Made by a program: the position numbers and the translations under genes. Positions 22,952 through 56,617 of a stretch of 64,000 nucleotides of DNA are shown piece after piece. The stretch is taken from IMG/VR virus record IMGVR_UViG_3300046513_000221, positions 186,001 through 250,000 of that record. One strand, 5' to 3'. Position 1 is the first letter of the stretch. Each line of letters starts with the position of its first letter. A model generated the notes under the pieces. The model made no database searches. It saw only the letters and a program-made list of their open reading frames with translations, and was not told the DNA's origin.

Positions 22952-23084
22952 ATGGACTCCATTTAGTTAGTTTGATTTAAGGTACTTCGGTACTAGATAT
23001 CCCTTCTAGACCATCCTAATCATATCTCTTTGACTCTACAGTAGATTCGGTTTTTTGAAGGTTTGCCGGAAGGTGTCTATTCCA

Positions 23085-23097
23085 AACACTTTATTAG
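23085..23097 (+). promoter_or_regulatory. Putative late promoter AACA-N6-TAG
   Basis: AACA CTTTAT TAG upstream of ATG 23132. Confidence 0.65.
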
Positions 23098-23131
23098 CGA
23101 AATACGAAGTTCCACCAGAAAGAGGAATACT

Positions 23132-25051: not shown

Positions 25052-25052
25052 T

Positions 25053-26030
25053 ATGAAGAAAACACTTAAAGACACCTACGTCTACAAGGTGCTGGGCCTC
25101 GACAACACCGTCGCGGCTTGCGCCAAGATCAACGCCGAGTTGGACTCCCGCCGCGTCACCGGCGACCGACTCGATGCGATCCTGAACGACATCAAGTTCA
25201 AGATCAACTACCCGACCAAGATCCGCATCATGGACGAACTGAAGAACGGCACCATCGTCTTCGTCGATGAGCCGGAAGCCAATGCCCTCCCGGCATGGCT
25301 CTACGGCAGTGCGGGTGGTCAGGTGCGCGCCGTGGTCAACCTGTTCGGCAAGGTCCGCACCGGACGCGACGGCCAGATGCAGTTCAACGTGCGCGAGGTC
25401 TTCGCTCTGGCGCAGATCGGCTTCACCATCAAGGAGTTCTACCTGAAGGAGAAGGCGGTCACCCAAAACATGATGATGTCGAAGCTGGCAGTGGTCATCT
25501 ACGAGCGCATGATCTACCGCGTTCTGGACACTCTGTACTCGCTGGACATCGGCCCCGCGTGGCTGCGCACTCAGGTCAAGCTGGAGATCCGCTTCTTCGC
25601 AACGCAGTACCTGCTGGAGAAGCCGGACGACGACGCGATCTACAAGTTCGTGGCGATGGACCTCGCCAAGGCGCTGGGTACCTCCCCTGAGCAGCTGATC
25701 GCACAGGTCGCGTCCAGCAAGACCGAAGGCGATCCGGTCGATCCGGCAACCGGCATGTTCGTGAAGTACTCCAGCATCCCGAACCTGATCAAGCACCTGC
25801 AGAACGCCAATCCGATCCTGAAGGATCTGGATACGACGACCTTCCTGCGCAAGTACATCATGATGTATGGCGAGAAGGCTCTGCTGATGCTGGAGAGCTA
25901 CTCGTACTTCTTGGCACTCATCATGAGCGTCACGCTGTCGGGTAACATCGTCAAGGACTTCGGTCTGGAGGCGGTGGTCGGTAAGGAGGGCGTGTCGATG
26001 TACAACACGTTCTTCGATCTGACTCGATAA
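25053..26030 (+). CDS. Conserved jumbo-phage protein, probably virion-associated
   Basis: Co-transcribed with 23132; strong codon bias. Confidence 0.55.
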   Translation: MKKTLKDTYVYKVLGLDNTVAACAKINAELDSRRVTGDRLDAILNDIKFKINYPTKIRIMDELKNGTIVFVDEPEANALPAWLYGSAGGQVRAVVNLFGKVRTGRDGQMQFNVREVFALAQIGFTIKEFYLKEKAVTQNMMMSKLAVVIYERMIYRVLDTLYSLDIGPAWLRTQVKLEIRFFATQYLLEKPDDDAIYKFVAMDLAKALGTSPEQLIAQVASSKTEGDPVDPATGMFVKYSSIPNLIKHLQNANPILKDLDTTTFLRKYIMMYGEKALLMLESYSYFLALIMSVTLSGNIVKDFGLEAVVGKEGVSMYNTFFDLTR

Positions 26031-29579: not shown

Positions 29580-31646
29580 TTACTCTTCGTCGCCGCGTTC
29601 ATCCTGCAGCGTTTCGAGGGCTTCTTCCTCCATCCCCTCGTTCTCCATCGTGATACCGATACCAGAGAAGTACGAGCGAATCACCTGTGCGGCATTCGTG
29701 ATCGTGTTCTCGGTGTCGGTGCCGATGTTGACGCGGTTGATGTTCTGGATGTCGTTGCGCAGCAGCTTGACGATCTGGTTCCGGCGCTCCACGTTGTGCG
29801 AGGAGTAGTGACGCAGGAAGTTCACGATCGGCTTGGAACCTTCTGGGCCGTTGGACAGCATCAGCATGTTGAACGTCTCCTGCTCGCCGAAGCGGATCGG
29901 AGACGAGTTGTTCATCGCGGTACCCTTCTTGTACTGCTCGTTGCTCTTGAACGGAACGTTGAGCAGACTGATCTGACCAGCCGAGCGAACGGAGAACTTC
30001 GACGCGGCCTCGTGCTTCAGCTGAATGAAGTACATGTCGCCGAGGATCTGCGCCTGAAGCAAGCCCTCGAATTTGAGCTTGTTGATGCCGAAGTGGTTAT
30101 ACAGGTTCGACATGATCTGCGGCGTGGCGTTCTCGAAGAAGGGAGGCTGATGGATGTACAGACCCTTCTCGAAGACGGCCTCGCAGTAAGCGTCGATGAA
30201 CTCGTCGGAGTCCGGCTGCGTATCGGCGAACTCCAGCAGCTCGGTACGCTGCAGCGGGTTCAGGATCTCGAAGAACTCCAGAATCGCGTTGAAGAGCCAG
30301 TAATTGCGCTCCAATACCACGCTCTTCGCCTTGAGGATGATCTCGTTGGCGATGAAGTTCAGCTCCTGCTCGAACAGCTGTGCGATGTTCATACGCCCGG
30401 TGACGCCGAGCGGATTCAGCACCACATCCGGGATGCGACCGTCTGCCGTGCGCGGCATCTGGTCATCCGGGATGATGGCGGAGATAACGCCCTTGTTGCC
30501 GTAGCGACCGGTGATCTTCGAACCGATGTAGATGCCGTGGTCCTTGCGGATTTTGAAGCGCAGCACAGCACCCTCGAACTCGGAGCGATCCTGACTGAAC
30601 TTGATGCCCGAGTTGTAGTCCTTGGCCTTCTGGAACAGGAAGCCGACATCGTCGCGCAGGGTCCAGCCGTTCTCTTTGAACTGAGTGATCATGTCCTCCA
30701 GTTCCTGATACTTGGCCTTGTTGTGCTCGATCAGGACGCGGATCGGCTCGTTGAAGGTGTAAGCCAGATCCTTCTCAGCGAAGTTGCTGAAGACCTCGAT
30801 GTCCTCGATGACGCCGTCGAAGAAGAAGCAGGTGTCGGTGCGCTCGATGGTCGCGCCGTTCTCCTTGAAGTCGTTCAGGATCGAACTGTAGTTGATCCGG
30901 CGACGGGCCGCGAGGATGCCGCCCTTGATCTTCTGACCGACCGTCGGGAACGGCTGGTGACGACCCTTGTCGCCGTACAGGTTCAGCAGAACGTCGTTGT
31001 TGTTGACGACGATGTCGGCTTCGGTCACGGAGGTGTGACTGAACTTTTTAGCACCCGACGCACTGAGTGGGATGCCGTCTTCGAAGGTCAGACCGTCTTT
31101 CGCGAGAAACAGCACGTTCAGGTTGACGCCGTACTTCAGATTCAGGCCGTCGTCGTACATGTTGGTGCGCTCCAGCAGCGTTCCGGCCTCCAGAGTATCC
31201 CCGAACTCCATCTCGGGCATTTTCCGTACGTTTTTGTGCCCATAGTTCTCGGTCAGGCGCGACACGGAGGTGTGGTGGAAGACGCCCACGGACTCGTCGC
31301 CGTACAGGAAGAAGTGGTACGCGTTGTTCTCGTTGAACTCCACGGTGCCAATGAAGGTGGCGTCCTCGGTCAACTGGGTGTAGCCCATGCCGTGCGAGTA
31401 CTTACCGACCTGATTCTCGAAGCGGCTGAAGACCTTCGGGATCTCTCCCTCGTTCAGCGTCAGTGCCTGACCGATCTGGCCGGTGAACATGTTCAGGCGC
31501 GAGCCATCACATTTGTTGACGTTTGGAGTGAGGACGTCCTCACCCAAGAAGTAATGGGGTGGTCTTTCCGTCACCACCTCGACGGCCTTAGCGGTTGCGG
31601 TCTTCTTGATGACCTTGGCTGCTTCGGTTGGTTTCTTCTTTGCCAT
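29580..31646 (-). CDS. rpoB: Non-virion RNA polymerase beta subunit, C-terminal part
   Basis: SR..MF, FEDGI, GILAARR, IGSKITGRYGNKGVIS, LNPLGV.GRMN, YF.QLKH, PIRFGEQE. Confidence 0.93.
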   Translation of the reverse strand: MAKKKPTEAAKVIKKTATAKAVEVVTERPPHYFLGEDVLTPNVNKCDGSRLNMFTGQIGQALTLNEGEIPKVFSRFENQVGKYSHGMGYTQLTEDATFIGTVEFNENNAYHFFLYGDESVGVFHHTSVSRLTENYGHKNVRKMPEMEFGDTLEAGTLLERTNMYDDGLNLKYGVNLNVLFLAKDGLTFEDGIPLSASGAKKFSHTSVTEADIVVNNNDVLLNLYGDKGRHQPFPTVGQKIKGGILAARRRINYSSILNDFKENGATIERTDTCFFFDGVIEDIEVFSNFAEKDLAYTFNEPIRVLIEHNKAKYQELEDMITQFKENGWTLRDDVGFLFQKAKDYNSGIKFSQDRSEFEGAVLRFKIRKDHGIYIGSKITGRYGNKGVISAIIPDDQMPRTADGRIPDVVLNPLGVTGRMNIAQLFEQELNFIANEIILKAKSVVLERNYWLFNAILEFFEILNPLQRTELLEFADTQPDSDEFIDAYCEAVFEKGLYIHQPPFFENATPQIMSNLYNHFGINKLKFEGLLQAQILGDMYFIQLKHEAASKFSVRSAGQISLLNVPFKSNEQYKKGTAMNNSSPIRFGEQETFNMLMLSNGPEGSKPIVNFLRHYSSHNVERRNQIVKLLRNDIQNINRVNIGTDTENTITNAAQVIRSYFSGIGITMENEGMEEEALETLQDERGDEE

Positions 31647-37538: not shown

Positions 37539-37804
37539 TACTTCTTCTCGCTTTCCTTCTTGACGTACTCCACGCCGTCGATGACAACGGCGGTCGCCAG
37601 CGATTTACCTTCCGGGACCGTCGCGGAAGTGATACTGTTCGGGCAACGCATGACGGTCAGGCGCTGTCCGTCAGTATTCGTGAGGTAGAAGGTTTTGCAG
37701 TCCTTCAGTTCGGACGGCATCGAAGCGAAGTAGAGGGTCTTGGCGCTGTCTACGCAGCCGGTCAGAGCCAGCATCGATGCCAGCAGAATTGCGATACGCT
37801 TCAT
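37538..37804 (-). CDS. Small lipoprotein (88 aa)
   Basis: Signal peptide II with lipobox LTGC; LKDCK...RCPNS disulfide motif; TAATG coupling to the upstream gene. Confidence 0.8.
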   Translation of the reverse strand: MKRIAILLASMLALTGCVDSAKTLYFASMPSELKDCKTFYLTNTDGQRLTVMRCPNSITSATVPEGKSLATAVVIDGVEYVKKESEKK

Positions 37805-39288
37805 TACATACGCTCCAGGAAAGAAAGAACCTCGCTGATGAGAGGCTTCGGGTTCTCCTCGATTGCTTCGAGGTAGGACGACAGGTCGTTCGACTCGTCG
37901 TGGCTTGGCAGGTACTCGAACTCGGTACTCATGATGTCGCCGATGAACACGATGATCGACTTGTTCTCTTCGATCTTCTCGCGGATGAGCGAGTACTTCG
38001 AGAGGATGTTGTGGTAGGACTTGGACTGCACGATCTCGGTGACCAGCTTGCCCTTGTGCAGGTTGCGACGGCCACCCTTCGGACGGATCTGCGCCGTGAG
38101 GATCGCCGCCAGCGTGTAGTACTTTTGATCGAGCAGCCACTGGCGGAAGATCATCAGCATGTACAGGTATTCCTCGCGGTTGCACAACTGGACGTTGATC
38201 TTGTCCTGTGCGCCGAGATAGTGCGTCATCAGGCGCACCTGCATCTGGTTGGGCTGCACCTTGCGGGTGTTGTACGCCAGCTCCTCCGGCGAGAACCGCA
38301 TCTTGCGGCGATCGATGAAGTTCTTGATGTTCTCCTTGTCGATCGTGTACTGCATCTCGTTGGAGTTCACCAGACGCATCTCGACGCGTTGGAACGGGCT
38401 GACGTTGCTCTCGTTGCTGTCGGTGCGGATCTGGCTGATCGGCTTGAAGTTGATCTTGATGTTCTGCGTGAACTGGTACATGATCTGCTGCTTGATCACG
38501 ACGTGCAGGAAAGAGACGATCGACTTGTTGATGTCGAGCTTCGGTATCGTGTCCCGTACGATCTTGCGGAACAGGTCAAGCGACATGACGTGTTCGTCCA
38601 CCGAGATGTTCTTCAGGTACTCCCACATGACGCGGTCGGAGTACAGGGTGTTGTTGACGGAGGACTTAATGAACTTCGTGATCTTCTGCGGCAGGTCCAG
38701 CTCCACGCCGTGCTCGTCGATGTTGAACACACCGAAGATGCGATTGAACACGTTGATCGTGATGTCCTGCTCCTTCTTGATCTGCATCACGTCCATATAG
38801 GAGCAGATCAGAGGGATGACGATTCTCGACATGATCGAGATGCAGATCACCATCTTGGCGTAGGAGTCCTTGAACTGTAGTTCCTCCTCGCCGGTGCGGG
38901 TCTCGATCGAGATCGTGTACTCCGCATTCACCTTCTCGCGGATGGCCGTTTGCAGGATCTCGTCGCTGATCAGCTGCTCGAACAGGAAGTCGATGAACAG
39001 ATTCACGTCGCCGAATGGCACACCTTCCTCGGTATGACCCTCGATGAAGGTACCGTCCTGGATGTTCATCATCACAGTCAGGTAGCTCTCCGGCAGGTCG
39101 TCGTAGAGGTCGAAGAAGTACTTCAGATCCTCGACGATCTTACCGATGATCGAGTTGTACACTCGCTTTCGGTTGATGGGAAAGAGGCAGTACTTGGCCT
39201 CCTCCCCGATGTTAAACAGCTGGGTGAAATCGAAGGTGAAGTCCTTCTCGTTCACACCAAACAGACTATCAATATTCGTGATCGTCAT
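37804..39288 (-). CDS. Sigma-like promoter-specificity subunit of the non-virion RNAP (AR9 gp226 / phiKZ gp68 type)
   Basis: RI.IP..C, YSDRVMWEYLKN, PKL..N.S..SFL.VVIKQ, F..N..I.FKP resemble AR9 gp226 as recalled; two genes from a chaperonin as in AR9 (g226/g228). Confidence 0.8.
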   Translation of the reverse strand: MTITNIDSLFGVNEKDFTFDFTQLFNIGEEAKYCLFPINRKRVYNSIIGKIVEDLKYFFDLYDDLPESYLTVMMNIQDGTFIEGHTEEGVPFGDVNLFIDFLFEQLISDEILQTAIREKVNAEYTISIETRTGEEELQFKDSYAKMVICISIMSRIVIPLICSYMDVMQIKKEQDITINVFNRIFGVFNIDEHGVELDLPQKITKFIKSSVNNTLYSDRVMWEYLKNISVDEHVMSLDLFRKIVRDTIPKLDINKSIVSFLHVVIKQQIMYQFTQNIKINFKPISQIRTDSNESNVSPFQRVEMRLVNSNEMQYTIDKENIKNFIDRRKMRFSPEELAYNTRKVQPNQMQVRLMTHYLGAQDKINVQLCNREEYLYMLMIFRQWLLDQKYYTLAAILTAQIRPKGGRRNLHKGKLVTEIVQSKSYHNILSKYSLIREKIEENKSIIVFIGDIMSTEFEYLPSHDESNDLSSYLEAIEENPKPLISEVLSFLERM

Positions 39289-39362
39289 GCGGTACCCTTT
39301 TCATTTTTTGGTGTTTCTTGACTACGCGCTAATTATATATGCACAATTGGCGATTTATGGTT

Positions 39363-40250
39363 TCAACGACGCACCTTGCTGTCCACTTTGTTGTCGACTT
39401 TCGTGTTCAATTTGCTCAGAACACGGGCCTTGCGATCGACCGTTTCCTTCTCACTCTTGTCGATCCGGGCCTTACCGCGTGCGGCGTTCACCGACTTCAC
39501 GACCTTCTTCTCCACCTTCGGAGCGGCCTGTTTAGGCGCTTTCATCTGCATCTTCTTGTGCATCTTGTAGTCTTGATCCACCTCGGCGAAGCTGCGGACG
39601 GCGTTCTTGATGCTGAACTTCGTCGCGTTGATGATGGCCGGGGCGTAGTTGGAGTACTCGTTCAGGCCCAACTGCCGGATGAACATCATGGCGAACATGA
39701 TGGACTTCTCGTAGTTGACGATCTCGTCCGGGTTGCGACTCGTCGGCGCATGGGTCAGACTCATCTCAGGCAGTTTGCTCTTGAAGTACGGGATCAGGAG
39801 CTCTTGCTTGTTGAACACGTACGCGTACGTGAAGGCAAATGCCGAGTTGTTACTGAATATTCGGATGTTTTTGCCGAGCAGATTAGTGCTTTTCGCATTA
39901 ACCTCAAGGAATTCTACCGCTACGTCGTACGTAACGCCAGACACCGTCTCAGATGGGACGCGCACGATGATGAACACGCTGTCCTGAACCTTGTAGACAT
40001 TGTACTTGAAGGATCCGTTCTCCTTCAGCACATGCTGGTACTTGCCGGTGATCTGCGCGAGCAGCTTCTTGCGCTTCTCGGTCGCGGCTGCGCCCTTCGT
40101 ACCGAACGGGTCGTTGATGAAGGACTGGATCGTGTACTTGATCCCGCTGAAGAGAGACCCGATGACGGATTGGTCAGCGGGTTTCGGAGCATGGGTGGGA
40201 TCCTTGATGTATGAAGGGAGAGTGTGGGTACTCTTCGTGGTTTCGGCCAT
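39363..40250 (-). CDS. Conserved jumbo-phage hypothetical protein
   Basis: VPSET...YDV.VEF...IFSNN.AF.FTYAYVFNK...NP..IVNYEKS. Confidence 0.7.
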   Translation of the reverse strand: MAETTKSTHTLPSYIKDPTHAPKPADQSVIGSLFSGIKYTIQSFINDPFGTKGAAATEKRKKLLAQITGKYQHVLKENGSFKYNVYKVQDSVFIIVRVPSETVSGVTYDVAVEFLEVNAKSTNLLGKNIRIFSNNSAFAFTYAYVFNKQELLIPYFKSKLPEMSLTHAPTSRNPDEIVNYEKSIMFAMMFIRQLGLNEYSNYAPAIINATKFSIKNAVRSFAEVDQDYKMHKKMQMKAPKQAAPKVEKKVVKSVNAARGKARIDKSEKETVDRKARVLSKLNTKVDNKVDSKVRR

Positions 40251-40304
40251 GTGGCACCTCAAAATTTTGAATTATAACACGAAATTTCTATTACGGGCAT
40301 AAAA

Positions 40305-40340
40305 TTTTCGGGATGGACTTGTTAGGATCCATCCCGAAAA
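40305..40340. terminator. Terminator of the chaperonin operon
   Basis: TTTTCGGGATGGA / TCCATCCCGAAAA. Confidence 0.75.
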
Positions 40341-40349
40341 CGGGTCAGC

Positions 40350-42050
40350 TTAGATCAGCTGGTTGATACTCAGGAGCATGCCCACGATCGAGACGGACGC
40401 CTTGAGGATCTGGACGTCGGTGTCGATAGGCGCGAGGACTTGTGTTTCCTCGATGCTCTGGAACTGGCGCTCCAGTACGTCGTACATGCGCGAGTCATTC
40501 ATGTGCAGCGCCTCGCGGATCATCTCCAACGCCTCCGGTTGGGAGCGCAGGACAGGATCCTTGCTGATGATGCAGTAGAACGTGTTGTAGTACACGTCGC
40601 GCAGACGGTCGATGACCTGACGCGTGAACTCCAAGTCGAACTGCTTCAGCACCGCGTCGTCCGCATGGATCTCGTCCCAGCGGTTGGCGATAGAATTGGC
40701 CGCAAAGAACAGCGAGATGTTGCCGCCGAATCCGAAGCCCTTCAGCAGGGCCGATTTACAGGCCAATACGGCATCCTCCACGAGGAATCGACGCGTCTGC
40801 TTCTCTTCGGCGGTGATGCCGCCCACCAGAATGCGAACGGACACGCCGTTCAGCTTGGACAGACGGATGCGCAGGTTACCGCGTACCGAAGGCTGGCTGA
40901 TGGGAGTCTCATCGAACTCCTTCTGCAGAACCTGCAGACGCTCGCCGTAGAACGGGGTGTTCAGGGTCATGCCCTGACCTGCGAGGAAGACCGATTTGGT
41001 TCCGGTCAGTTCGAGGCTGCTCGCCGCACCGAGTTGCTTCAGGTCGAAGGTCGCCGGGTCGCGGATGATGTCGGAGTCCAGATAGATTGCCAGATCGAGG
41101 AACTCGTCGTGCTGCAGCTGGCTCGACAGATCGTACGTCTTGACGATGTAGATCTTGTTCTGCTTGCGCAGGAAGTCTGCCATGCAGGTGTTCAGAACGT
41201 CCTGATGGGTCTGGTCGGTGATGACGACGATGTTGCGCGCCGGGTTCGCCTGTTGGACCTTCTTCAGCAGCTCATAGTGCTCGCCGAAGAACTCGTAGCT
41301 CATGAACACGATCGGCTTGTCTACCGTGATGGTGGACTTGTCGCCGAAGTACATGTTGTGCGCCGGACCACGATCGAACGTGAAGCCGTAACGCATGGTG
41401 TGTGACACAGGTGTCAGCGAATCGCGTGGATCCTCTTCGATGCGCACATCCGACAGATAGGACAGACCGGAGAAGACGTTGGCGATGTACTCACCGATGC
41501 GTACATCGTTGTTGTTCGAGATCTGGCTGATGGCCGTCAGCACGCGCTTGCGGTTGTCGCCATTCACCTGATGGGTGTACTTATTCTCGATCTCGCGTTC
41601 GAGATAGAACACCACGCGGTCCAGCAGATCCAGCAGCTGCTTGCGGGTGTACTTCCGGTCGCGCAGGTCCATCAGGGCTTCATACATGAAGCTCGCCGAC
41701 AGAACGGCACTGGTGGAGCCGTCGCCGACGGTCTTGACCAGATTGTAGGACACCTTCTTCAGCAGCTGGTGGACGGCGACGTCCTGCGCAGCAGCATACT
41801 TCAGGTTCTCCAGAATGGTGTAACCATCCTTGGTGATGATCGGAACACCACCATCATTCTCGATCATGGTGTTCGAGCCCAGCGGACCATAGCTCTTCGC
41901 CAGAACGCTGACCAGCGAGGTCAGGAACTTCAGCGTATCACTGTGGAACTGAGCGTCATCCTTGATGACACCTTGGAAAGGCGACGGCGAACCCATTTGC
42001 TGGGCCACAGTCGTCTCGGCAGGTTTCTTTCTTTTCAAAAATTCGAACAT
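40350..42050 (-). CDS. groEL: Phage GroEL-like chaperonin
   Basis: SYGPLGSNTMI, ITKDGYTI, VGDGSTSA, ISNND..IG, VGG.T..E....R..VEDAV.ACKSA..GF..GG. Confidence 0.93.
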   Translation of the reverse strand: MFEFLKRKKPAETTVAQQMGSPSPFQGVIKDDAQFHSDTLKFLTSLVSVLAKSYGPLGSNTMIENDGGVPIITKDGYTILENLKYAAAQDVAVHQLLKKVSYNLVKTVGDGSTSAVLSASFMYEALMDLRDRKYTRKQLLDLLDRVVFYLEREIENKYTHQVNGDNRKRVLTAISQISNNNDVRIGEYIANVFSGLSYLSDVRIEEDPRDSLTPVSHTMRYGFTFDRGPAHNMYFGDKSTITVDKPIVFMSYEFFGEHYELLKKVQQANPARNIVVITDQTHQDVLNTCMADFLRKQNKIYIVKTYDLSSQLQHDEFLDLAIYLDSDIIRDPATFDLKQLGAASSLELTGTKSVFLAGQGMTLNTPFYGERLQVLQKEFDETPISQPSVRGNLRIRLSKLNGVSVRILVGGITAEEKQTRRFLVEDAVLACKSALLKGFGFGGNISLFFAANSIANRWDEIHADDAVLKQFDLEFTRQVIDRLRDVYYNTFYCIISKDPVLRSQPEALEMIREALHMNDSRMYDVLERQFQSIEETQVLAPIDTDVQILKASVSIVGMLLSINQLI

Positions 42051-42319: not shown

Positions 42320-43492
42320 TTACTGAACCCTTGCTATACTTTGAAAAAGCGTGTTGGTCAGATCGACGGTGATGTCGGTGATCATCTCACCGCAGTGGCC
42401 GCACTTCAGGTTAGGCAGCTTGTACGAAACCTTGAACGCGTCCATCTTGGCGCTGATCTCCTTGTCGAGGAACGCCTTGTCTTCCGGATCGATGTCGATG
42501 ATCACGCGGATCTTGTCCTGAATCGTCTCCAGTTCGATGAACTCCAGACGGCCCTCGGACAGAGCCTGAATGTGAGGAATCGCCATGGTGCCGATGTGCT
42601 TCAGGTAGCCGAAGATCTCCGGCTCGACGGCGGGGTGCTGCTCGGCGCGGTTCAGCGTGCGGATGTAGTCGTGCAGGGTCGGCGTGGTCAGGTCCAGAAC
42701 GGTTTTGCTGACCGGCAGGATGATGCGACGGGTGTTGTTTACGACCGACGACTTCACCAGCTCGTTTGCTGGCAGGTTCTTGGACAGCAGGTCGCGAATG
42801 TAGCTGCCAACCTCGTTCTCGTCCTTGGCCTGAATCAGCAGTTCCTTGCTGATCTTCGCCTTGTTGGTCTTCTCGCACGAGCCGCAGATGACGTTGTAGT
42901 CGCCTTCTTCCGGGAAGGTGGCGCAGTAGATGCCGTAGATCAGGGTCTCGAAGTCGGCCTCGGACGTGATCTTCAGCCACAGGTCGAAGTCGATCTTACC
43001 GAAGTTGGCGTTAACCATCTTCGAGTAGGTGAAGTTGAACAGCTTCAGGTTCTGTTCCTTCTCGGTGCCGGTGAACTTGCGCACCTTGATCATGTCGTCG
43101 TTGTTCAGTGCGCGGAAGGCGGCACGGTAGCCCGACTGCAGGGCGACGATCTCGAAGGAAGGCTTCAGGAACAGCGTGTCCATTTCCTGATGGGTGCCCA
43201 GCGGGTTATCCGACTTACGGATGTTGATCGCGGACAGGTCGATGTTCAGCGCGGCCAGAACCTTGCGAGCAGCGCTCTGCGCGGTTTCCTTGGCCGGGGC
43301 CGGTGCTGCCGGTGCCTCGGGAGCCACTGGAGCAGGGGATTGCTCGACAGCGGTCTGTACCGGGGCTTCGCCAGCGATTGCGGTCGAAACTTCCGCTTCC
43401 GCTACGGGAGCAGCCTGTTGACCCAGATCTTCTTGCGAAACGCCCTGCTCCGCCAGCATGCTATGCAGATCGTCGATGTTGTTGATTTCCAT
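42320..43492 (-). CDS. Baseplate hub / tail assembly chaperone (T4 gp26-like) with acidic N-terminal extension
   Basis: Two CxxC motifs (ICGSC, KCGHC), C-terminal I.VD...LF; AGGA RBS at ATG 43492. Confidence 0.6.
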   Translation of the reverse strand: MEINNIDDLHSMLAEQGVSQEDLGQQAAPVAEAEVSTAIAGEAPVQTAVEQSPAPVAPEAPAAPAPAKETAQSAARKVLAALNIDLSAINIRKSDNPLGTHQEMDTLFLKPSFEIVALQSGYRAAFRALNNDDMIKVRKFTGTEKEQNLKLFNFTYSKMVNANFGKIDFDLWLKITSEADFETLIYGIYCATFPEEGDYNVICGSCEKTNKAKISKELLIQAKDENEVGSYIRDLLSKNLPANELVKSSVVNNTRRIILPVSKTVLDLTTPTLHDYIRTLNRAEQHPAVEPEIFGYLKHIGTMAIPHIQALSEGRLEFIELETIQDKIRVIIDIDPEDKAFLDKEISAKMDAFKVSYKLPNLKCGHCGEMITDITVDLTNTLFQSIARVQ

Positions 43493-45883: not shown

Positions 45884-45896
45884 TTAGCTATTTGTT
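45884..45896 (-). promoter_or_regulatory. Putative late promoter AACA-N6-TAA
   Basis: Minus strand AACA AATAGC TAA; back-to-back with the plus-strand copy at 45914. Confidence 0.65.
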
Positions 45897-45913
45897 GAAC
45901 AAAATCCTGATGA

Positions 45914-45926
45914 AACATAAGGTTAA
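45914..45926 (+). promoter_or_regulatory. Putative late promoter AACA-N6-TAA
   Basis: AACA TAAGGT TAA upstream of the spanin genes. Confidence 0.65.
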
Positions 45927-45957: not shown

Positions 45958-46440
45958 ATGTTTAAAGCATTAACTGCAGGTGCAAAACCGTACATCGCCC
46001 TCGCCGTGGTGATCGCTATCGCGGTGCTGTTCGCACTGTGGCAGCACTCCAAGGCAGACCTCGCCACCGTCAAAGCTGACGCCAAGGTAATGGAGGTCCA
46101 AAAGAATGCCGTTATCGAACACAATGGCGAACAGATCACCAAGGCCGTAGAGGTCAACAAAGCCAATGACGAGACCCTCAAAACGGTTGTCAAGGCGCAG
46201 GAAACAATCAAGAAGAGCTCGGAGAAGATCACCAAGATCATCGACGACAACAATCAGGTCAAGAACGATCTCCTCATCGAGATCCAGAAGAATGTTGACG
46301 AGGAACGCTATGTGAGTCCAGAGACCGCATCCTCGATCCAGAAGGTACTGGATGAGATCGAACCCCTCGTTTACCCTCCTCAAGGAGAGCCGATTACCAC
46401 TGTGTACTCCGGCGAACAACTCGATGTCACACTTACGTAA
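45958..46440 (+). CDS. Inner-membrane spanin (Rz-like)
   Basis: Single N-terminal TM helix then coiled coil; GGAG RBS; followed by a lipoprotein. Confidence 0.75.
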   Translation: MFKALTAGAKPYIALAVVIAIAVLFALWQHSKADLATVKADAKVMEVQKNAVIEHNGEQITKAVEVNKANDETLKTVVKAQETIKKSSEKITKIIDDNNQVKNDLLIEIQKNVDEERYVSPETASSIQKVLDEIEPLVYPPQGEPITTVYSGEQLDVTLT

Positions 46441-46450
46441 GGAGCACGAA

Positions 46451-46813
46451 ATGAGCACCAACATCAAGAAAATAATGATCGTCTGCCTCACTCTCTTCAT
46501 GACCTGCATCCTTGCTGGATGTGGTACGATGAACCCGGAGGCCGGTAAGATCGACGTGACCGTCGCGAAACAAGAGGCAGTTTTCATCGAGATCCCACAG
46601 GAAACCCTCGACAAGTGCAAGAAGCCTCGCAAGCAAGATACCGTCTTCTTCCAGCACCTCAAGGAGGGGAAGATCAAAGAGAAGGAACTCGCTGCCGCCT
46701 ACGTGGAGAGCTACACCGGCCACGTCAACTGCTATCTGTCCAAGGAAGAGGCAGTTTTCCTCCAGCAGAAGCTGAAGGAACAAACTAAAACGGTGAAGAA
46801 AGATGGCAATTAA
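46451..46813 (+). CDS. Outer-membrane spanin (Rz1-like lipoprotein)
   Basis: Lipobox LAGC; IP..TL..C.KP motif; AAGGAG RBS. Confidence 0.75.
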   Translation: MSTNIKKIMIVCLTLFMTCILAGCGTMNPEAGKIDVTVAKQEAVFIEIPQETLDKCKKPRKQDTVFFQHLKEGKIKEKELAAAYVESYTGHVNCYLSKEEAVFLQQKLKEQTKTVKKDGN

Positions 46814-49304
46814 CCCATTAGACCAGTTAAAGATCATCGCTAGCAGGGAGATTGATGTACTCACATCTCACTGCGTGAAGGTGGTGATCAAGGATCAGGA
46901 TGAGGCCGATGTATTCGAGACCCAAGAGAGTCTCCGTCAGGCCTCCCTGTACCTCGACGTGTACTACCAGCTGGACAAGTACCCGACGCATGACATCCTG
47001 CGGACGCTCATTCGAGCAGCCGCTACACAAGACAGTCCTGATGCCGCTACGGTCGAGGCCGTGCAGACGCAGATCGATCTGAACTACAGTAACGCCCCGG
47101 TGACCCGGACAGCGCTGATCGCGCTCAAGGACAAGATTGCCCGGAACGGCTTCATCTCGATCACTCTGGTGGACAACAACATCACCGAGGAACGCACGCA
47201 CTTCCTTGAGAGCTTCATCGATCTGAACAAGTACTACCAGAATCTCAAGGAGACCTACGGCATCCCGATCTGGAAGAGCCGCAAGGCATATGACTTCGAT
47301 CTGCTGTTGGAGCCTAAGAAGGAGGATGACCTCATTCTGGCTAACTTCAGTGAGAACTACGCCGAGTGCCAGCGCTACTTCGTTTCCGTGATGTTCACCA
47401 AGTCGATGGCCAAGGATATGGTCGGCACGACCTCCACCGGCAGCTACATCAACTACTACAAGGCCTTCGGTCGCTTCTTCATCTGCTTCATGGTGATGAT
47501 CAAGACGATCAACGAGAAGCTCAAGAACCCGCTGGACGCTAACTCGATGGATGAGTACATCCTCGACAACATGCTCTTCTCCTTCGGGTTCACGGACTTC
47601 AAGAACTTCCCTGTAGACTACAAGCGGAAGATCGTCCAGAACATCAACGAGTTGATTCGACACAAGGGTACTGACCGTATCTTTACCGACATCCTCCAGA
47701 TCTTCGGTTTCAAGGACATCAACATCTTTAAGTACTACCTCGTCAAGCACCAGTCGTTCAACGATGACAAGAGCATGGCCGGGGTTGACGACAAGATCCG
47801 CTTCGTCTCACACAACGTGACCATCCCGTCCCTTCAGGAGGCGGTGAAGCGCAAGGAGTACCTGACCCACTCGTTCGAGAGCGTGACCGACAGCGATCCG
47901 TACTGGCAAGCGTCCAAGCTGGAGATCGGGAAGAAGGACTTCAACTACGTCAACAGTAAGTACTTCTCCATCGAGAGTAGCTTCGACCTCTTCAAGGAGA
48001 CCTCGAACATCGCATACTTCATCAATCTGGTGAAGACCCTGCGTGACGAGTACCCGGAAGCCGACAACGCCCTGACCCTCACGGCGACCAAGATCTCCGA
48101 TCGTCCGATCGAGCTGGTCGATCTGCTGGTCGCAGCGCAGATCATCGTCTCGAACTACTACGGTATCGACGACACGATTGATTTCTCGCAAGAGAGCATC
48201 TACAATGTGTTGAGCTTCGACCCGGAGGATGAGACCCCGCTGAACAAGCTGGTCACCTCCGACGAACACGACATCAACAACCCCGACACGCAGCGGTACG
48301 TGCTGGATCATATCTCGGACTACGACGATGTGAGCAAGAGCGAGCTGGAGACCATCTTCAAGTCCGACAAGGGCAAGATGGCCAACATGATCGCGCTCAT
48401 CAAGAGCCAACAGCACACGATCGGTGATGTGCGCGACTTCAAGAAACTCCAGGCACTCTACGAGTCGAAGTTCCTCGCGAAGTTCAACCTCCGCGAATAC
48501 GAAGGTTTCATTGGCTACAACCAGTACCTTCGCACTCGGAACCTCGATCTGCACACCTACATCGACACGATCGTGACCTCGTCCACGCAGGACGAGAAGA
48601 AGGTGGAAGTCCTGTACATCCTTAGCGCTCTGACCGAGTATGCGAAGAACCTCGATGTGCAGTTCGACAACCGCTTCTCGGACGTTATCACGTCATACAT
48701 CAACCGGATGGTATCGATCTTCAAGGCGTACACTGTGACGCTGAAGGACTTCACCATCTTCTACTCGTACGACGACAGTCTCTTCTTCACGTACTTCGAT
48801 GAGGCATTCGTCTCCACGAAGAACACCTTCGACGATGATCTGATCCAGATCAACGACCACGTTGGTGCAAGCCGGGGGAGCGAAGTCCTGCATGATGTCA
48901 AGATGCATCTGCTGGACCGGGCTGAGGGAATGACGACCATCATCCGCAATCATGCGAATGAGGACCACCTGTATCTCGTGGACCGACACAGTGAGCGGAC
49001 GCTTCTCACGATCGAAGACAGGTTCAGCATGGAGGATTCGATCCATTCCATGCGTACCAAGAAAGAGGATAGAGAGACCACCCTCCGGTACAGGGACTTC
49101 ATCGAGTATGACAAGGAGGAACCTTCCGAATTTAACCTCGCGATCGAAAAGGCGTGGTTCGCCGACAGGACGCGCCCTACGTCCGTCCTCTCTCCGGAGG
49201 ATCACATGCCGATACATGACCGAACGGGCATGCGCAGCATCGGTGCTAACATTTCAGACCGCGTCAGGTTCTCGGACAGCTTCGAGATACGAGTAATCGA
49301 ATAA
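46803..49304 (+). CDS. Large baseplate wedge-like structural protein
   Basis: 833 aa; LIRHKGT....DIL..FG resembles the gp7/P2-gpI wedge KGT motif. Confidence 0.55.
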   Translation: MAINPLDQLKIIASREIDVLTSHCVKVVIKDQDEADVFETQESLRQASLYLDVYYQLDKYPTHDILRTLIRAAATQDSPDAATVEAVQTQIDLNYSNAPVTRTALIALKDKIARNGFISITLVDNNITEERTHFLESFIDLNKYYQNLKETYGIPIWKSRKAYDFDLLLEPKKEDDLILANFSENYAECQRYFVSVMFTKSMAKDMVGTTSTGSYINYYKAFGRFFICFMVMIKTINEKLKNPLDANSMDEYILDNMLFSFGFTDFKNFPVDYKRKIVQNINELIRHKGTDRIFTDILQIFGFKDINIFKYYLVKHQSFNDDKSMAGVDDKIRFVSHNVTIPSLQEAVKRKEYLTHSFESVTDSDPYWQASKLEIGKKDFNYVNSKYFSIESSFDLFKETSNIAYFINLVKTLRDEYPEADNALTLTATKISDRPIELVDLLVAAQIIVSNYYGIDDTIDFSQESIYNVLSFDPEDETPLNKLVTSDEHDINNPDTQRYVLDHISDYDDVSKSELETIFKSDKGKMANMIALIKSQQHTIGDVRDFKKLQALYESKFLAKFNLREYEGFIGYNQYLRTRNLDLHTYIDTIVTSSTQDEKKVEVLYILSALTEYAKNLDVQFDNRFSDVITSYINRMVSIFKAYTVTLKDFTIFYSYDDSLFFTYFDEAFVSTKNTFDDDLIQINDHVGASRGSEVLHDVKMHLLDRAEGMTTIIRNHANEDHLYLVDRHSERTLLTIEDRFSMEDSIHSMRTKKEDRETTLRYRDFIEYDKEEPSEFNLAIEKAWFADRTRPTSVLSPEDHMPIHDRTGMRSIGANISDRVRFSDSFEIRVIE

Positions 49305-49315
49305 CAGTTATCTAG
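49303..49315 (+). promoter_or_regulatory. Putative late promoter AACA-N6-TAG
   Basis: AACA GTTATC TAG upstream of ATG 49344. Confidence 0.65.
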
Positions 49316-49343
49316 TCAACTTTTCTACCTAGAAAGAGAAATC

Positions 49344-50063
49344 ATGCACCAATCCAATGTGAAACAACTGAGTTTCGAAGAGCAGATGATGTTCCGTGAC
49401 ATCCGTCCGGATCGTCTGAAGTCGAAGCTGCAAGGCATCGTCGTGGTCAAGGACGCCGAAGACGGCAAGATCCTGCAGGTCAAGCCAAATCTGGTCGTGC
49501 GCGACGGTCGCGAGATGACCCTGCGCAAGGTCTTCAACCTGCCGGGCGCTGTTCCGGGCGAGAGCGAGTCCGCTCTGGGTTCCAAGTCGGTCCTGCTGTT
49601 CGGCATCGGCACCGGTGGCACCCCGAACAACGATCCGTTCAACCCGTTCCAGCCGACCCCTTCGGATCACGATCTGTCTTCGGCGATCTCGTTCCGCACC
49701 TCCAGCAACGCCGACCCGCTGCCGGACGCCGATGCACTGAAGTACTCGGACGGTCGCTCCGTCTCGGGCGGCAACATCGAGTGGTACAAAAAGCTCTTCA
49801 GCAACGGTCACGGCGAGATCACCGTCGATCCGGTCGCCGACATGGTGTACAACAAGCTGTCGCTGCAGATCAGCCCACAGGATGCTCGTGACAAGTTCGT
49901 CAACGAGCTGGCACTGTACTGGGCGCAATACAACGCGTCGGCGCTGGACATGAACTCGAAGTTCAGCAACTACTTCATGTTCAGCCGCATCACCTTCCTG
50001 ACCGAACCACTGCCGTCCACGACCAATAAGGCCTTGGATATTGATTACTACGTCTACCTGTAA
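49344..50063 (+). CDS. Baseplate/tail-collar structural protein
   Basis: NLVV.DGR...FGIGTGG...NELAL motif; very strong codon bias. Confidence 0.5.
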   Translation: MHQSNVKQLSFEEQMMFRDIRPDRLKSKLQGIVVVKDAEDGKILQVKPNLVVRDGREMTLRKVFNLPGAVPGESESALGSKSVLLFGIGTGGTPNNDPFNPFQPTPSDHDLSSAISFRTSSNADPLPDADALKYSDGRSVSGGNIEWYKKLFSNGHGEITVDPVADMVYNKLSLQISPQDARDKFVNELALYWAQYNASALDMNSKFSNYFMFSRITFLTEPLPSTTNKALDIDYYVYL

Positions 50064-55745: not shown

Positions 55746-55790
55746 AGAAATAACCCCATAGGCCCGTAAAGGGTCTATGGGGGTTTCTTA
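55746..55790. terminator. Bidirectional terminator
   Basis: CCCCATAG / CTATGGGG family hairpin. Confidence 0.8.
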
Positions 55791-56609: not shown

Positions 56610-56617
56610 TGAATTTC

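What the first reader, a model, noticed from the sequence alone, without database searches (positions are those of the whole stretch)
37804..42050. AR9-type late transcription system in a GC-rich Gram-negative-host phage: predicted uracil-containing genome
Seen: AACA-N6-TA(A/G) lies just upstream of 12 operon starts (+: 381, 4385, 14705, 21188, 23085, 26772, 45914, 49303, 53697; -: 43555, 45896, 58357), with AACA-N6-TAT at 13266 and 16988. It is always gene-oriented, and the genes are mostly structural, lysis or vRNAP. The window also has nvRNAP beta/beta' genes and a sigma-like gene two genes from a chaperonin. Established: Bacillus phage AR9 (U replaces T) uses late promoters AACA-N6-TA; gp226 reads template-strand dU at -11/-10, Val206 excludes thymine, and gp228 is its chaperonin. 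From memory the AR9 segment YSDVVIWTYLKN aligns with YSDRVMWEYLKN here (38608-38643), retaining the Val; this needs verification. Inference: this phage probably has dU-DNA or descends from such a lineage. Yet it is GC-rich (known U-DNA jumbo phages are AT-rich) and has spanins, and its MBD4-like glycosylase plus only degenerate dUTPase folds fit the model. Caveat: U-DNA amplifies poorly in standard libraries, so recovery of this sequence weighs somewhat against it.
Basis: partly seen in the sequence, partly recalled or inferred. Interest (0 to 1): 0.88.

Follow-up and report, generated by a model that had tools for sequence, protein, structure and literature searches.

The report
GC-rich relative of uracil-DNA jumbo phages
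This stretch of a 263-kb metagenomic phage genome carries the complete AR9/phiR1-37-type two-polymerase transcription system, with the uracil-selective promoter-reading subunit and its AACA-N6-TA late promoters, and the rest of the genome has the enzymes known to make uracil-DNA, so it is very probably the first GC-rich member of the uracil-DNA jumbo-phage group.

Summary
The window is positions 186,001-250,000 of a 263,413-bp JGI contig that is collinear with Yersinia phage phiR1-37, a proven dU-DNA phage.

- **Specificity subunit:** 37804-39288(-) encodes an AR9 gp226 homologue (PDB 7S01_A, E 1.6e-33). The recalled alignment is exact, with AR9 V206 matching V220.
- **Polymerase core:** all four nvRNAP core subunits exist. 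BetaN keeps R363 and N382, and has K375R as in phiR1-37.
- **Late promoters:** AACA-N6-TA ranks first of 28,667 gapped motifs. 15 of 22 copies end 8-60 nt before a gene start (p 3e-18). They sit mostly before orthologues of phiR1-37 virion proteins, and the sites are conserved in four diverged relatives.
- **Early promoters:** the AR9 early-promoter core ATATAWWAT occurs 14 times against 0.25 expected, before replication genes and before the gp226-like gene.
- **dU pathway:** elsewhere on the contig, syntenic homologues of the phiR1-37 dCTP deaminase and dTTP pyrophosphatase are present.
- **Thymidine genes:** no thymidylate synthase or dUTPase family hit was found in the ~89% of the genome I could scan.

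dU-DNA is therefore a well-supported prediction (~0.75), but it is not shown. The system is a new, GC-rich (50-56%) member of a known kind. A Gram-negative host is not new, because phiR1-37 has one. The "degenerate dUTPase" claim and "gp228 is gp226's chaperonin" are unsupported.

The parts
37804..39288 (-). nvRNAP promoter-specificity (fifth) subunit, AR9 gp226 / phiR1-37 g245 family, 494 aa. The 2.1bis helix YSDRVMWEYLKN is encoded at 38608-38643. V220 (codon 38629-38631) corresponds to AR9 V206.
   Evidence: PDB 7S01_A E 1.6e-33 with residue alignment. phrog_25005 E 3e-44. phiR1-37 g245 at 35% identity is the best cultured-phage hit. AF2 model has pLDDT 81, and Foldseek's top hits are 7S01_A (E 4e-17), then phiKZ gp68.
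39332..39340 (-). Early-type (vRNAP) promoter core ATATATAAT, directly upstream of the gp226-like gene.
   Evidence: The same core precedes AR9 gp226 (annotated early promoter) and phiR1-37 g245 (annotated promoter).
39363..40262 (-). Conserved protein between the chaperonin and the gp226-like gene. It is the orthologue of phiR1-37 g244 (a virion protein by proteomics) and holds the same position as the 825-nt ORF in AR9.
   Evidence: phrog_20045 E 1e-41. tblastn to g244 at 34% identity. Synteny.
40350..42050 (-). GroEL-like phage chaperonin (equivalent to AR9 gp228 and phiR1-37 g243).
   Evidence: Pfam Cpn60_TCP1 E 8e-24 and phrog_5725 E 2e-77. Synteny.
42320..43492 (-). Orthologue of phiR1-37 g241 and first gene of the unit that runs into the chaperonin. 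A late promoter lies at 43544-43555(-).
   Evidence: The promoter is conserved upstream of the orthologue in L013, L015, L016 and L017.
29580..31646 (-). nvRNAP betaC subunit (AR9 gp089 / phiR1-37 g261).
   Evidence: PDB 7S00_C E 1.6e-109. phrog_3295.
17422..18780 (+). nvRNAP beta'N subunit (AR9 gp270 / phiR1-37 g274).
   Evidence: PDB 7S01_d E 3e-71. 50% identity to g274.
53734..55044 (+). Virion RNAP subunit (phiR1-37 g231, a virion protein). A late promoter lies at 53697-53708(+).
   Evidence: phrog_2962 E 1e-66. No match to the AR9 nvRNAP chains. 36% identity to g231. Motif.
55788..58303 (-). Late unit. It starts with 57113-58303 (orthologue of virion protein g205) and ends with 55788-56609 (orthologue of vRNAP subunit g203). 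The late promoter is at 58346-58357(-).
45885..45925 (.). Back-to-back late promoters. AACA-N6-TA at 45885-45896(-) drives 45141-45857, the orthologue of virion endonuclease g237 (60% identity). AACA-N6-TA at 45914-45925(+) drives the spanin and virion-protein operon.
   Evidence: In the alignment of five diverged phages, the only invariant blocks are TA-N6-TGTT and AACA-N6-TA.
45958..46813 (+). Spanin pair. The i-spanin is 45958-46440 (N-terminal TM segment plus coiled coil). The o-spanin is 46451-46813 (lipobox LAGC).
   Evidence: Translations. A PHROG Rz-like spanin hit occurs in the sweep.
46803..50063 (+). Virion proteins. 46803-49304 is the g234 orthologue. 49344-50063 is the g233 orthologue and has its own late promoter at 49303-49314(+).
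21188..26030 (+). Late promoters at 21188-21199 and 23085-23096. They precede orthologues of virion proteins g272 (21224-22519), g271 (23132-25051) and g270 (25053-26030).
381..392 (+). Late-promoter match 27 nt before 419-1654 (Gly-rich, tail-fibre-like, no family hit). Further matches of the same kind, each followed by a start codon within 17-30 nt, are at 4385-4396(+), 14705-14716(+), 26772-26783(+) and 26259-26270(-).
13266..13285 (.). Ambiguous region. AACA-N6-TA(T) at 13266(+) overlaps early-type cores ATATAATAT/ATATATAAT (13275-13285) between divergent genes. It may be a gene with both promoter classes. 16988-16999(+) is a second ambiguous TAT variant.
   Evidence: AR9 has a 'continuous' gene class with both promoter types (PMC7598289).
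9226..9236 (.). Early-type promoter cores (ATATAWWAT). Other copies are at 11361-11371, 16334-16342(+), 16390-16398(-), 33280-33288(-), 53659-53667(-) and 63809-63873. They lie before Dda helicase, UvsX-like, RNR small subunit and other non-virion genes.
   Evidence: 14 matches against 0.25 expected. Contexts.
14219..14689 (-). MBD4-like mismatch DNA glycosylase (HhH-GPD), 156 aa. The catalytic Asp of MBD4 aligns to Glu.
   Evidence: PDB MBD4 4EW4/1NGN E 5e-15. Pfam HhH-GPD scores 24.6 bits, just under the 26.2 cut-off. Phage homologues occur only in the Xp12 group and a few others.

Best explanation
The window belongs to a ~263-kb jumbo phage of a Gram-negative host. The phage is a GC-rich relative of Yersinia phage phiR1-37 and Bacillus phage AR9/PBS1, and it runs the same host-independent, two-polymerase programme. 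An injected virion RNAP reads AT-rich early promoters (core ATATAWWAT) in front of replication genes, nucleotide-metabolism genes and the nvRNAP genes, including the gp226-like gene. The non-virion RNAP has four split beta/beta' subunits plus the gp226-like specificity subunit encoded at 37804-39288. It then reads late promoters 5'-AACA-N6-TA-3' on the template strand and starts at the A, 13-55 nt before the start codons of virion, spanin and vRNAP genes. These parts are shown by sequence: the proteins, the conserved pocket residues, both promoter classes, and their placement and conservation. One further step is inferred. In AR9 the -10 and -11 template bases must be uracil, because a C5 methyl would clash with V206. 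This phage keeps that residue and the rest of the pocket, and it carries syntenic homologues of the phiR1-37 dCTP deaminase and dTTP pyrophosphatase. Its virion DNA therefore very probably contains deoxyuridine instead of thymidine, which also makes late transcription blind to host DNA.
For: (1) The gp226 homologue matches 7S01_A at E 1.6e-33. V206->V220, I207->M221, Y210->Y224, S245->S259 and Y246->F260. The roles of these residues are taken from PMC9209446. Across 19 family members the V206 column is V (17) or I (2), never a small residue. (2) BetaN on the same contig (L020:9995-11440) matches AR9 gp105 at E 4e-83. R363 and N382 are kept, and K375 is R as in phiR1-37. BetaC, beta'N and beta'C are identified. 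(3) AACA-N6-TA is rank 1 of 28,667 motifs for placement before gene starts, with 15 of 22 copies in the zone (p 2.7e-18). N6 is the only enriched spacing. The same test is positive in phiR1-37 (45/182 against ~5% in controls, p 1e-13) and in GC-rich relatives (16/32, p 1e-5). (4) Orthologues of phiR1-37 virion proteins lie in motif-headed units in 11 of 13 cases, against 3 of 11 for non-virion orthologues (p 0.007). (5) Promoter positions are conserved in four relatives with 51-68% protein identity, and the invariant intergenic blocks are exactly the two motifs. (6) ATATAWWAT occurs 14 times against 0.25 expected, and it is identical to the AR9 and phiR1-37 promoter cores before their gp226 genes. 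(7) Contig 69-91 kb reads vRNAP beta | Ham1p_like(343 aa)-318 aa-81 aa-beta'C-97 aa-dCMP_cyt_deam(189 aa). This is the same order as phiR1-37 g099|g100(Dtt)-g101-g102-g103(Dcd). The deaminase is 34% identical to Dcd with HAE and PCxxC kept, and phiR1-37 g103 has the highest bit score (77) and lowest E-value among the 15 of 2,408 phage hits that were listed. The enzymology of Dcd and Dtt is from PMC12697855. (8) No Thymidylat_synt, Thy1 or dUTPase Pfam hit was found in ~234 of 263 kb. (9) Every cultured phage that matches this gp226-like protein belongs to the AR9/PBS1, phiR1-37, Staphylococcus S6-like, Listeria LPJP1 or BpSp groups. Those tested chemically contain dU (PMC7598289).
Against: No chemistry has been done, because sequence reads cannot tell U from T. 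The genome is 54-55% GC with GC3 ~0.8, whereas proven dU jumbo phages are 27-33% GC. Near-identical contigs were assembled from three datasets, although dU-DNA can fail in some library preparations (PMC8323127). The Ham1-like protein is only 26% identical to Dtt, and phiR1-37 is not among its top database hits, so its dTTPase specificity is inferred from synteny. The deaminase family also includes ordinary dCMP deaminases. About 11% of the contig (46.9-60 kb and 160-176.4 kb) was not scanned. Parts of the scan used near-identical sister contigs or GC3-filtered ORF sets. No UDG inhibitor can be recognised, though none is known in phiR1-37 either.
Confidence: 0.72

Rival explanations
1. The transcription machinery is the same, but the DNA is ordinary thymine DNA. 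In this reading the GC-rich lineage descended from a dU ancestor and reverted to T. Small changes in the pocket (I207->M, K375->R) or in backbone geometry now let the enzyme accept thymine. The deaminase and the Ham1-like enzyme would serve ordinary dTTP supply and house-cleaning.
For: The genome has high GC and very high GC3, unlike all proven dU jumbo phages. It was readily assembled in three datasets. M221 replaces AR9 I207. The Ham1-like protein is weakly similar to Dtt. dCMP_cyt_deam proteins are common in T-DNA phages (2,408 records).
Against: V or I is invariant at the V206 position in all 19 family members, although V206G is enough to relax specificity in AR9. K375R is shared with phiR1-37, which is proven dU. 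M and I alternate within the clade. A deaminase feeding dTTP synthesis needs a thymidylate synthase, and none was found in 89% of the genome. Dcd/Dtt synteny with phiR1-37 is retained. A 98%-identical relative of a phiR1-37 protein also sits on a JGI metagenome contig (P0019), so recovery from metagenomes does not argue strongly against dU.
Confidence: 0.17
2. The DNA carries another thymine replacement, such as 5-hydroxymethyluracil or a hypermodified derivative made after dU incorporation, rather than plain uracil.
For: The Dcd-plus-dTTPase logic would also suit pathways that start from dUMP or dUTP. The genome encodes a 2OG-Fe(II) oxygenase (1773-2381) and many proteins of unknown function.
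Against: Any C5 substituent should clash in the conserved pocket just as a methyl group does (PMC9209446). No ThyA-like dUMP hydroxymethylase was found in the scanned 89%. The oxygenase is of the 2OG-FeII_Oxy_3 type common in phages, not a Tet/JBP family hit.
Confidence: 0.07
3. The AACA-N6-TA matches are chance occurrences of a six-base motif and not promoters.
For: The total count is only modestly above expectation, 22 against 13.3 +/- 3.6. Six or seven copies lie inside genes.
Against: It ranks first of 28,667 motifs for placement, p 2.7e-18. It shows spacing and permutation specificity. It is conserved at orthologous sites in four diverged relatives. It shows the same behaviour in phiR1-37.
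Confidence: 0.01

Closest known systems
Yersinia phage phiR1-37 (dU-DNA jumbo phage, Gram-negative host)
   Same: It is the closest cultured relative. The window is collinear (inverted) with phiR1-37 ~142-206 kb, and the contig at 25-91 kb is collinear with 57-144 kb. They share the g245 (gp226-like), GroEL, primase and nvRNAP/vRNAP subunits and many virion proteins (24-60% identity). They also share the Dtt-g101-beta'C-Dcd block, K375R in betaN, and the same early core and late motif.
   Different: GC is 54-55% against 32-33%, and GC3 is ~0.8. There is no DNA-level similarity. An RNR operon and ~48 kb of extra genes lie between the betaN and vRNAP regions. It has an MBD4-like glycosylase that is absent from phiR1-37. 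Its DNA composition has not been measured.
Bacillus phage AR9 / PBS1 nvRNAP holoenzyme (gp105, gp089, gp270, gp154, gp226; PDB 7S00/7S01/7UM0)
   Same: All five subunits have homologues (E 1e-33 to 1e-109). The 2.1bis helix is kept, including V206 and Y210, as are betaN R363 and N382. The late consensus AACA-N6-TA and the early core ATATATTAT are kept. The local gene order GroEL-X-gp226-primase is the same.
   Different: Identity of the specificity subunit is 27%. I207->M and K375->R. The host is Gram-negative, shown by the spanins. GC is 55% against 27%. Dcd is not next to RNR as it is in AR9. It has a Ham1-type enzyme rather than the PBS1 Dtm nucleotidase. No Ugi homologue was recognised.
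phiKZ nvRNAP gp68 (thymine-DNA, nucleus-forming jumbo phages)
   Same: It is a structural homologue of the fifth subunit (Foldseek 8QUE_B E 2e-6), with split beta/beta' polymerases.
   Different: There is no sequence-level match. The late promoter is different, and the DNA contains thymine (PMC7598289).
Roseophage DSS3_VP1 ('Naomiviridae', dU-DNA, 70-75 kb)
   Same: It is a Gram-negative-host phage with dU replacing dT, using a Dcd plus a dT-nucleotide-degrading enzyme (PMC8323127, PMC12697855).
   Different: It is an unrelated virus with no multisubunit RNAPs or gp226. It uses an HD-family Dtm instead of a Ham1-type enzyme.
Xanthomonas phage Xp12 group (MBD4-like glycosylase homologues)
   Same: These are among the few phages (Xp12-type Xanthomonas, Stenotrophomonas AXL_1, Janthinobacterium, one cyanophage, one archaeal virus) with a homologue of the 14219-14689 glycosylase (30% identity). 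From my own knowledge, Xp12 replaces C by 5-methylcytosine, so deamination yields a base that is 'normal' for its DNA. That creates the same repair problem as C->U in dU-DNA.
   Different: They are unrelated siphovirus-type genomes of ~63 kb with a different base modification.

Membership tests
AR9-type non-virion RNAP holoenzyme (gp226-dependent, template-strand promoter recognition) | Four split core subunits homologous to AR9 gp105 (betaN), gp089 (betaC), gp270 (beta'N) and gp154 (beta'C) | tested here: met
   BetaC E 1.6e-109. Beta'N E 3e-71. BetaN E 4e-83 (L020). Beta'C P0039 E 1.3e-59. The last two lie on the same contig, outside the window.
AR9-type non-virion RNAP holoenzyme (gp226-dependent, template-strand promoter recognition) | Fifth subunit homologous in sequence to gp226 | tested here: met
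   7S01_A E 1.6e-33 over residues 11-456. Foldseek top hit 7S01_A E 4e-17.
AR9-type non-virion RNAP holoenzyme (gp226-dependent, template-strand promoter recognition) | The -10U pocket: gp226 V206/I207/Y210 and betaN R363/K375 | tested here: met
   V220, M221 and Y224. R, and K->R as in phiR1-37. The column is V/I in 19 of 19 family members. This is tested by alignment only; the pocket geometry was not modelled in a complex.
AR9-type non-virion RNAP holoenzyme (gp226-dependent, template-strand promoter recognition) | Late promoters 5'-AACA-N6-T(A/G)-3' just upstream of late genes | tested here: met
   Association with virion-protein orthologues.
AR9-type non-virion RNAP holoenzyme (gp226-dependent, template-strand promoter recognition) | Initiation requires uracil at template positions -11/-10 and works on single-stranded template | not testable with these tools
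   This needs in vitro transcription with dU and dT templates.
dU-DNA phages (thymidine fully replaced by deoxyuridine) | dU in place of dT in virion DNA | not testable with these tools
   Sequence data do not distinguish U from T.
dU-DNA phages (thymidine fully replaced by deoxyuridine) | Phage dCTP deaminase (Dcd) supplying dUTP | tested here: inconclusive
   A homologue is present at the syntenic position, 34% identical to phiR1-37 Dcd with catalytic motifs kept. Specificity for dCTP rather than dCMP cannot be read from the sequence.
dU-DNA phages (thymidine fully replaced by deoxyuridine) | Enzyme removing dT nucleotides (Dtt or Dtm) | tested here: inconclusive
   A Ham1p_like protein of similar unusual length (343 against 358 aa) sits at the position of phiR1-37 Dtt. 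It is 26% identical, pairwise E 2e-11, and it is not a top database match.
dU-DNA phages (thymidine fully replaced by deoxyuridine) | No phage thymidylate synthase or dUTPase | tested here: inconclusive
   No Pfam hit in ~89% of the contig. 46.9-60 kb and 160-176.4 kb were not scanned.
dU-DNA phages (thymidine fully replaced by deoxyuridine) | Protection from host uracil-DNA glycosylase (Ugi-type inhibitor) | not tested
   No family model was searched specifically. None is known in phiR1-37 either (PMC8150378).

The most novel reading that the evidence does not exclude
A whole clade of GC-rich (50-56% GC, GC3 ~0.8) jumbo phages of Gram-negative bacteria has fully dU-substituted DNA. It escapes the AT-drift seen in all known dU phages because it encodes an MBD4-like glycosylase that removes uracil only opposite guanine. 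This would be a mismatch-specific repair solution to cytosine deamination in a genome where uracil is a legitimate base, parallel to the same enzyme in 5-methylcytosine phages of the Xp12 group.
Probability: 0.25. Interest if true: 0.75.

Novelty: new member of a known kind. Interest (0 to 1): 0.52.

Why it matters
All proven uracil-DNA jumbo phages are AT-rich (27-33% GC), and only a handful are known, because sequencing cannot see uracil. This contig and at least six related metagenomic contigs extend the AR9/phiR1-37 lineage to 50-56% GC genomes. They keep the polymerase pocket, both promoter classes and the dU-pathway genes. Three things would follow if the DNA is indeed dU.

- The gp226-type subunit with its conserved Val/Ile, together with Dcd/Dtt synteny, would be a usable sequence marker for finding uracil-DNA phages in metagenomes.
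- AT-richness would not be an obligatory consequence of uracil-DNA.
- The MBD4-like glycosylase would become a candidate for how such genomes repair deaminated cytosine.

It would also supply a GC-rich, Gram-negative version of a uracil-dependent RNA polymerase for mechanistic comparison.

Tried and rejected
- **Gene calling:** calling genes by longest ORF was misleading, because long spurious antisense ORFs appear in GC-rich DNA. I replaced it with GC3/codon-usage calling.
- **Motif count alone:** a simple total count of the motif is not convincing, 22 against 13-20 expected. The placement tests were needed.
- **Finding the glycosylase:** a regex for the HhH motif failed to find it, and one Pfam batch missed it. 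It was found.
- **Finding betaN:** searching with phiR1-37 g194 did not list a protein from this contig. BetaN was recovered with a family alignment against IMG/VR.
- **Genome walk:** one look-up returned no new sequence because the sister strain differs. The metagenome-contig scan did not contain the contig.
- **Long repeated promoter word:** I looked for one that would fetch the whole contig in a single scan, and none exists.
- **dUTPase claim:** 'degenerate dUTPase folds' has no supporting hit.
- **Chaperonin claim:** 'gp228 is the chaperonin of gp226' is not in the literature I read.
- **Structure job:** I reran it without them.

Full report
**Where the window comes from.** The gp226-like protein is encoded on a 263,413-bp JGI metagenome contig (3300046513, Ga0495616_0000004; also IMG/VR UViG_3300046513_000221). 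Near-identical shorter contigs exist in JGI 3300046660 and in run SRR26076596. From the coordinates, the window is contig positions 186,001-250,000 in the same orientation. GC is 52-57%. Real genes have GC3 of 0.7-0.88 and almost no A at third positions, while antisense ORFs are long but spurious. No cultured phage shares DNA similarity.

**The proteins of the finding.**
- 37804-39288(-) encodes a 494-aa protein that matches chain A of the AR9 nvRNAP holoenzyme (gp226; PDB 7S01/7UM0) at E 1.6e-33 over nearly its whole length.
YSDRVMWEYLKN (38608-38643) aligns with AR9 YSDVVIWTYLKN, so AR9 V206 corresponds to V220.
- Fraser et al. (PMC9209446) show that the C-beta of V206 lies 3.9 A from C5 of the -10 uracil, and that V206G lets the enzyme accept thymine. 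I207 and betaN R363 sandwich the base, K375 hydrogen-bonds to it, and Y210 stacks on -9G.
- Here the residues are V220, M221 and Y224. In 19 family members, including phiR1-37 and AR9, the V206 column is V in 17 and I in 2, never a small residue.
- An AF2 model (pLDDT 81) finds 7S01_A first (E 4e-17) and phiKZ gp68 next.
- The gene two positions upstream is a GroEL-like chaperonin. The order chaperonin-X-gp226-primase is the same in AR9 and phiR1-37.
- AR9 gp228 is a characterised phage chaperonin, but its tested substrate is endolysin. I found no evidence that it serves gp226.

**The rest of the polymerase.**
- BetaC (29580-31646-, E 1.6e-109 to AR9 gp089) and beta'N (17422-18780+, E 3e-71 to gp270) are in the window.
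- Beta'C (P0039, E 1.3e-59 to gp154) lies at contig ~79-81 kb, and betaN (L020:9995-11440, E 4e-83 to gp105) at ~35-37 kb.
- BetaN keeps R363 and N382 and has K375->R. That is the same substitution as in phiR1-37, whose DNA is proven dU.
- Virion-RNAP subunits are at 53734-55044(+) and 55788-56609(-).

**Late promoters.**
The bare count is unimpressive, 22 against 13.3 +/- 3.6.
- Placement is decisive. With curated start codons, 15 of 22 copies end 8-60 nt upstream of a co-oriented gene start, a zone that holds 3.06% of positions. In an unbiased enumeration of 28,667 4mer-N3..9-2mer motifs, AACA-N6-TA ranks first (p 2.7e-18). Shifted versions of itself follow, giving a consensus close to C-AACA-N6-TA-G/A.
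- In strictly intergenic DNA there are 10 copies against 2.8 +/- 1.8 in shuffles. Only the N6 spacing and only the AACA permutation are enriched.
- An annotation-free version of the test is positive for this contig (17/37 against ~19% for other spacings, p 8e-4). It is also positive for phiR1-37 as a positive control (45/182 against ~6%, p 1e-13) and for GC-rich relatives (16/32 against ~13%, p 1e-5).
- The genes behind the motif are mostly orthologues of proteins found in phiR1-37 virions: g272, g271(-g270), g237(-g239, g240), the spanin-g234 operon, g233, vRNAP g231, and g205(-g203).
- Replication genes (Dda helicase, UvsX-like, primase, betaC, RNase H) lack the motif. Virion orthologues lie in motif-headed units in 11 of 13 cases, against 3 of 11 for non-virion orthologues (p 0.007).
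- In four relatives whose gp226-like proteins are 51-68% identical, the motif sits at the orthologous places: before the g237-like, g241-like and i-spanin genes. In an alignment of the back-to-back promoter region 45860-45950, the invariant blocks are exactly TA-N6-TGTT and AACA-N6-TA.
- Sokolova et al. give the AR9 consensus as A(-11)ACA-N6-U-A/G(+1), and report that AR9 nvRNAP transcribes phiR1-37 genomic DNA (PMC5449584).

**Early promoters (not in the finding).**
- ATATAWWAT occurs 14 times against 0.25 expected. All copies are intergenic.
- They lie before the Dda helicase, the UvsX-like gene, the RNR small subunit, several unknowns and the gp226-like gene itself (39332-39340-).
- The core is identical to the annotated AR9 early promoter before gp226 (AAATATATATTAT) and to the annotated phiR1-37 promoter before g245.
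- 13266 overlaps such a core, so it may belong to the 'continuous' class that has both promoter types (PMC7598289). 16988 is a TAT variant before a small ORF ahead of beta'N, and I leave it open.

**Is the DNA uracil-DNA?**
- The closest cultured relative of the specificity subunit is phiR1-37 g245 (35% identity). All 21 cultured-phage hits belong to the AR9/PBS1, phiR1-37, Staphylococcus S6-like, Listeria LPJP1 and BpSp groups.
- The window is collinear, inverted, with phiR1-37 ~142-206 kb, and contig 25-91 kb is collinear with 57-144 kb.
- Li et al. 2025 (PMC12697855) showed that phiR1-37 makes dU-DNA with a dCTP-specific deaminase (Dcd, g103) and a dTTP pyrophosphatase (Dtt, g100, 'non-canonical purine NTP pyrophosphatase'). 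These flank the beta'C gene g102.
- The contig has the same block: vRNAP beta | Ham1p_like 343 aa - 318 aa - 81 aa - beta'C - 97 aa - dCMP_cyt_deam 189 aa.
- The deaminase is 34% identical to Dcd with HAE and PCxxC kept. phiR1-37 g103 has the highest bit score and lowest E-value among the phage hits that were listed.
- The Ham1-like protein is 26% identical to Dtt over 293 residues, but it is not a top database match. Its orthology therefore rests on position, family and unusual length.
- I walked the contig to look for thymidylate synthase and dUTPase. I used precomputed Pfam hits on this or near-identical contigs, and my own Pfam sweeps of ORF sets. These covered 1-46.9 kb, ~60-160 kb and 176.4-263.4 kb, about 89% of the contig.
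- No Thymidylat_synt, Thy1 or dUTPase hit appeared. The sweeps did show RNR, guanylate kinase (weak), NUDIX, PRPP synthetase, NAPRTase, ligase, DnaB, PolB-exo and others.
- 46.9-60 kb and 160-176.4 kb remain unread.

**Points against dU.**
- The GC content is unlike every proven dU jumbo phage.
- The phage was assembled from three datasets, although Nextera libraries failed on dU roseophage DNA. This objection is weakened by a metagenome contig that carries a protein 98% identical to phiR1-37 beta'C (P0019).
- Weighing all this, I put dU-DNA at about 0.75, reversion to thymine at about 0.17, and another C5-modified base at about 0.07.

**Other claims.**
- The host is Gram-negative. An i-spanin (TM segment plus coiled coil, 45958-46440) and a lipoprotein o-spanin (LAGC lipobox, 46451-46813) follow the late promoter at 45914.
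- The 'MBD4-like glycosylase' is real. 14219-14689(-) matches the MBD4 glycosylase domain at E 5e-15, with the catalytic Asp aligned to Glu. Pfam HhH-GPD scores just under its cut-off.
- Its only phage homologues are in the Xp12 group, two other betaproteobacterial or Stenotrophomonas phages, a cyanophage and an archaeal virus. None are in phiR1-37 or AR9. From my own knowledge, Xp12 has 5-methylcytosine DNA, so a mismatch-specific glycosylase makes sense in both settings. This is an idea, not a result.
- No dUTPase-like domain was found in the window.

**Comparison and novelty.**
- The system works like the AR9 nvRNAP and meets every membership feature that sequence can test. It is a new, GC-rich member of the AR9/PBS1/phiR1-37 kind.
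- The same GC-rich subclade (50-56% GC) includes at least six other IMG/VR contigs.
- A Gram-negative host is not new, because phiR1-37 has one.
- The new elements are the base composition, the conservation of both promoter classes at 55% GC, and the glycosylase.

Noticed in passing
window 14219-14689 (-): An MBD4-like HhH-GPD glycosylase (PDB MBD4 E 5e-15). The catalytic Asp of MBD4 is replaced by Glu. Its phage homologues are essentially limited to the Xanthomonas Xp12 group and a few others, and it is absent from phiR1-37 and AR9. It may be a G:U-specific repair enzyme for a uracil genome.
   Followed up: partly
window 9226-9236, 11361-11371, 13275-13285, 16334-16342, 16390-16398, 33280-33288, 39332-39340, 53659-53667, 63809-63873: A second promoter class, ATATAWWAT (14 matches against 0.25 expected), lies before non-virion genes. 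It is identical to the AR9 early-promoter core and to the annotated phiR1-37 promoter before g245.
   Followed up: yes
L018:7353-8384 and L018:12089-12658 (contig ~78-84 kb, outside the window): Ham1p-like and dCMP_cyt_deam genes flank the nvRNAP beta'C gene, in the same order as phiR1-37 Dtt and Dcd.
   Followed up: yes
window 419-1654 (+), 5197-6825 (+); L036:4137-9911: A run of Gly-rich, tail-fibre-like ORFs has a flat GC profile (GC3 0.57-0.59, GC2 0.53-0.60), unlike the rest of the genome (GC3 ~0.8). They have no family hits except DUF4376 and a head-fibre domain nearby. This may be a recently exchanged host-range module.
   Followed up: no
window, ORF not pinpointed; L051:21592-22104: Hits to counter-defence protein families: an Acb2/Tad1 hairpin domain (E 8e-4) somewhere among the window ORFs, and Acb1 on the sister contig at ~128 kb.
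   Followed up: no
window 1773-2381 (+): A 2OG-Fe(II) oxygenase (2OG-FeII_Oxy_3, E 2e-20). Its function here is unknown. It is not a Tet/JBP-type hit.
   Followed up: no
window 55.8-64 kb plus contig 250-263 kb and 1-35 kb: About 48 kb, including a class I ribonucleotide reductase operon (59565-63536), lies between the vRNAP and betaN regions. phiR1-37 has only ~7 kb there and no RNR at this place.
   Followed up: partly
window-wide: The word TCTTTTTTTTT / AAAAAAAAAGA occurs 7 times. These are probably U-tracts of intrinsic terminators at operon ends.
   Followed up: no
window 26335-26664 (-): A 109-aa protein with three predicted transmembrane segments (holin-like) sits next to the small late-promoter-headed ORF 26069-26236.
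   Followed up: no
P0019; P0121: A protein 98% identical to phiR1-37 beta'C sits on a 54.9-kb JGI metagenome contig. A betaN homologue is filed under Proteus mirabilis on a 50.5-kb record. AT-rich phiR1-37-like phages are therefore also present in public assemblies.
   Followed up: no
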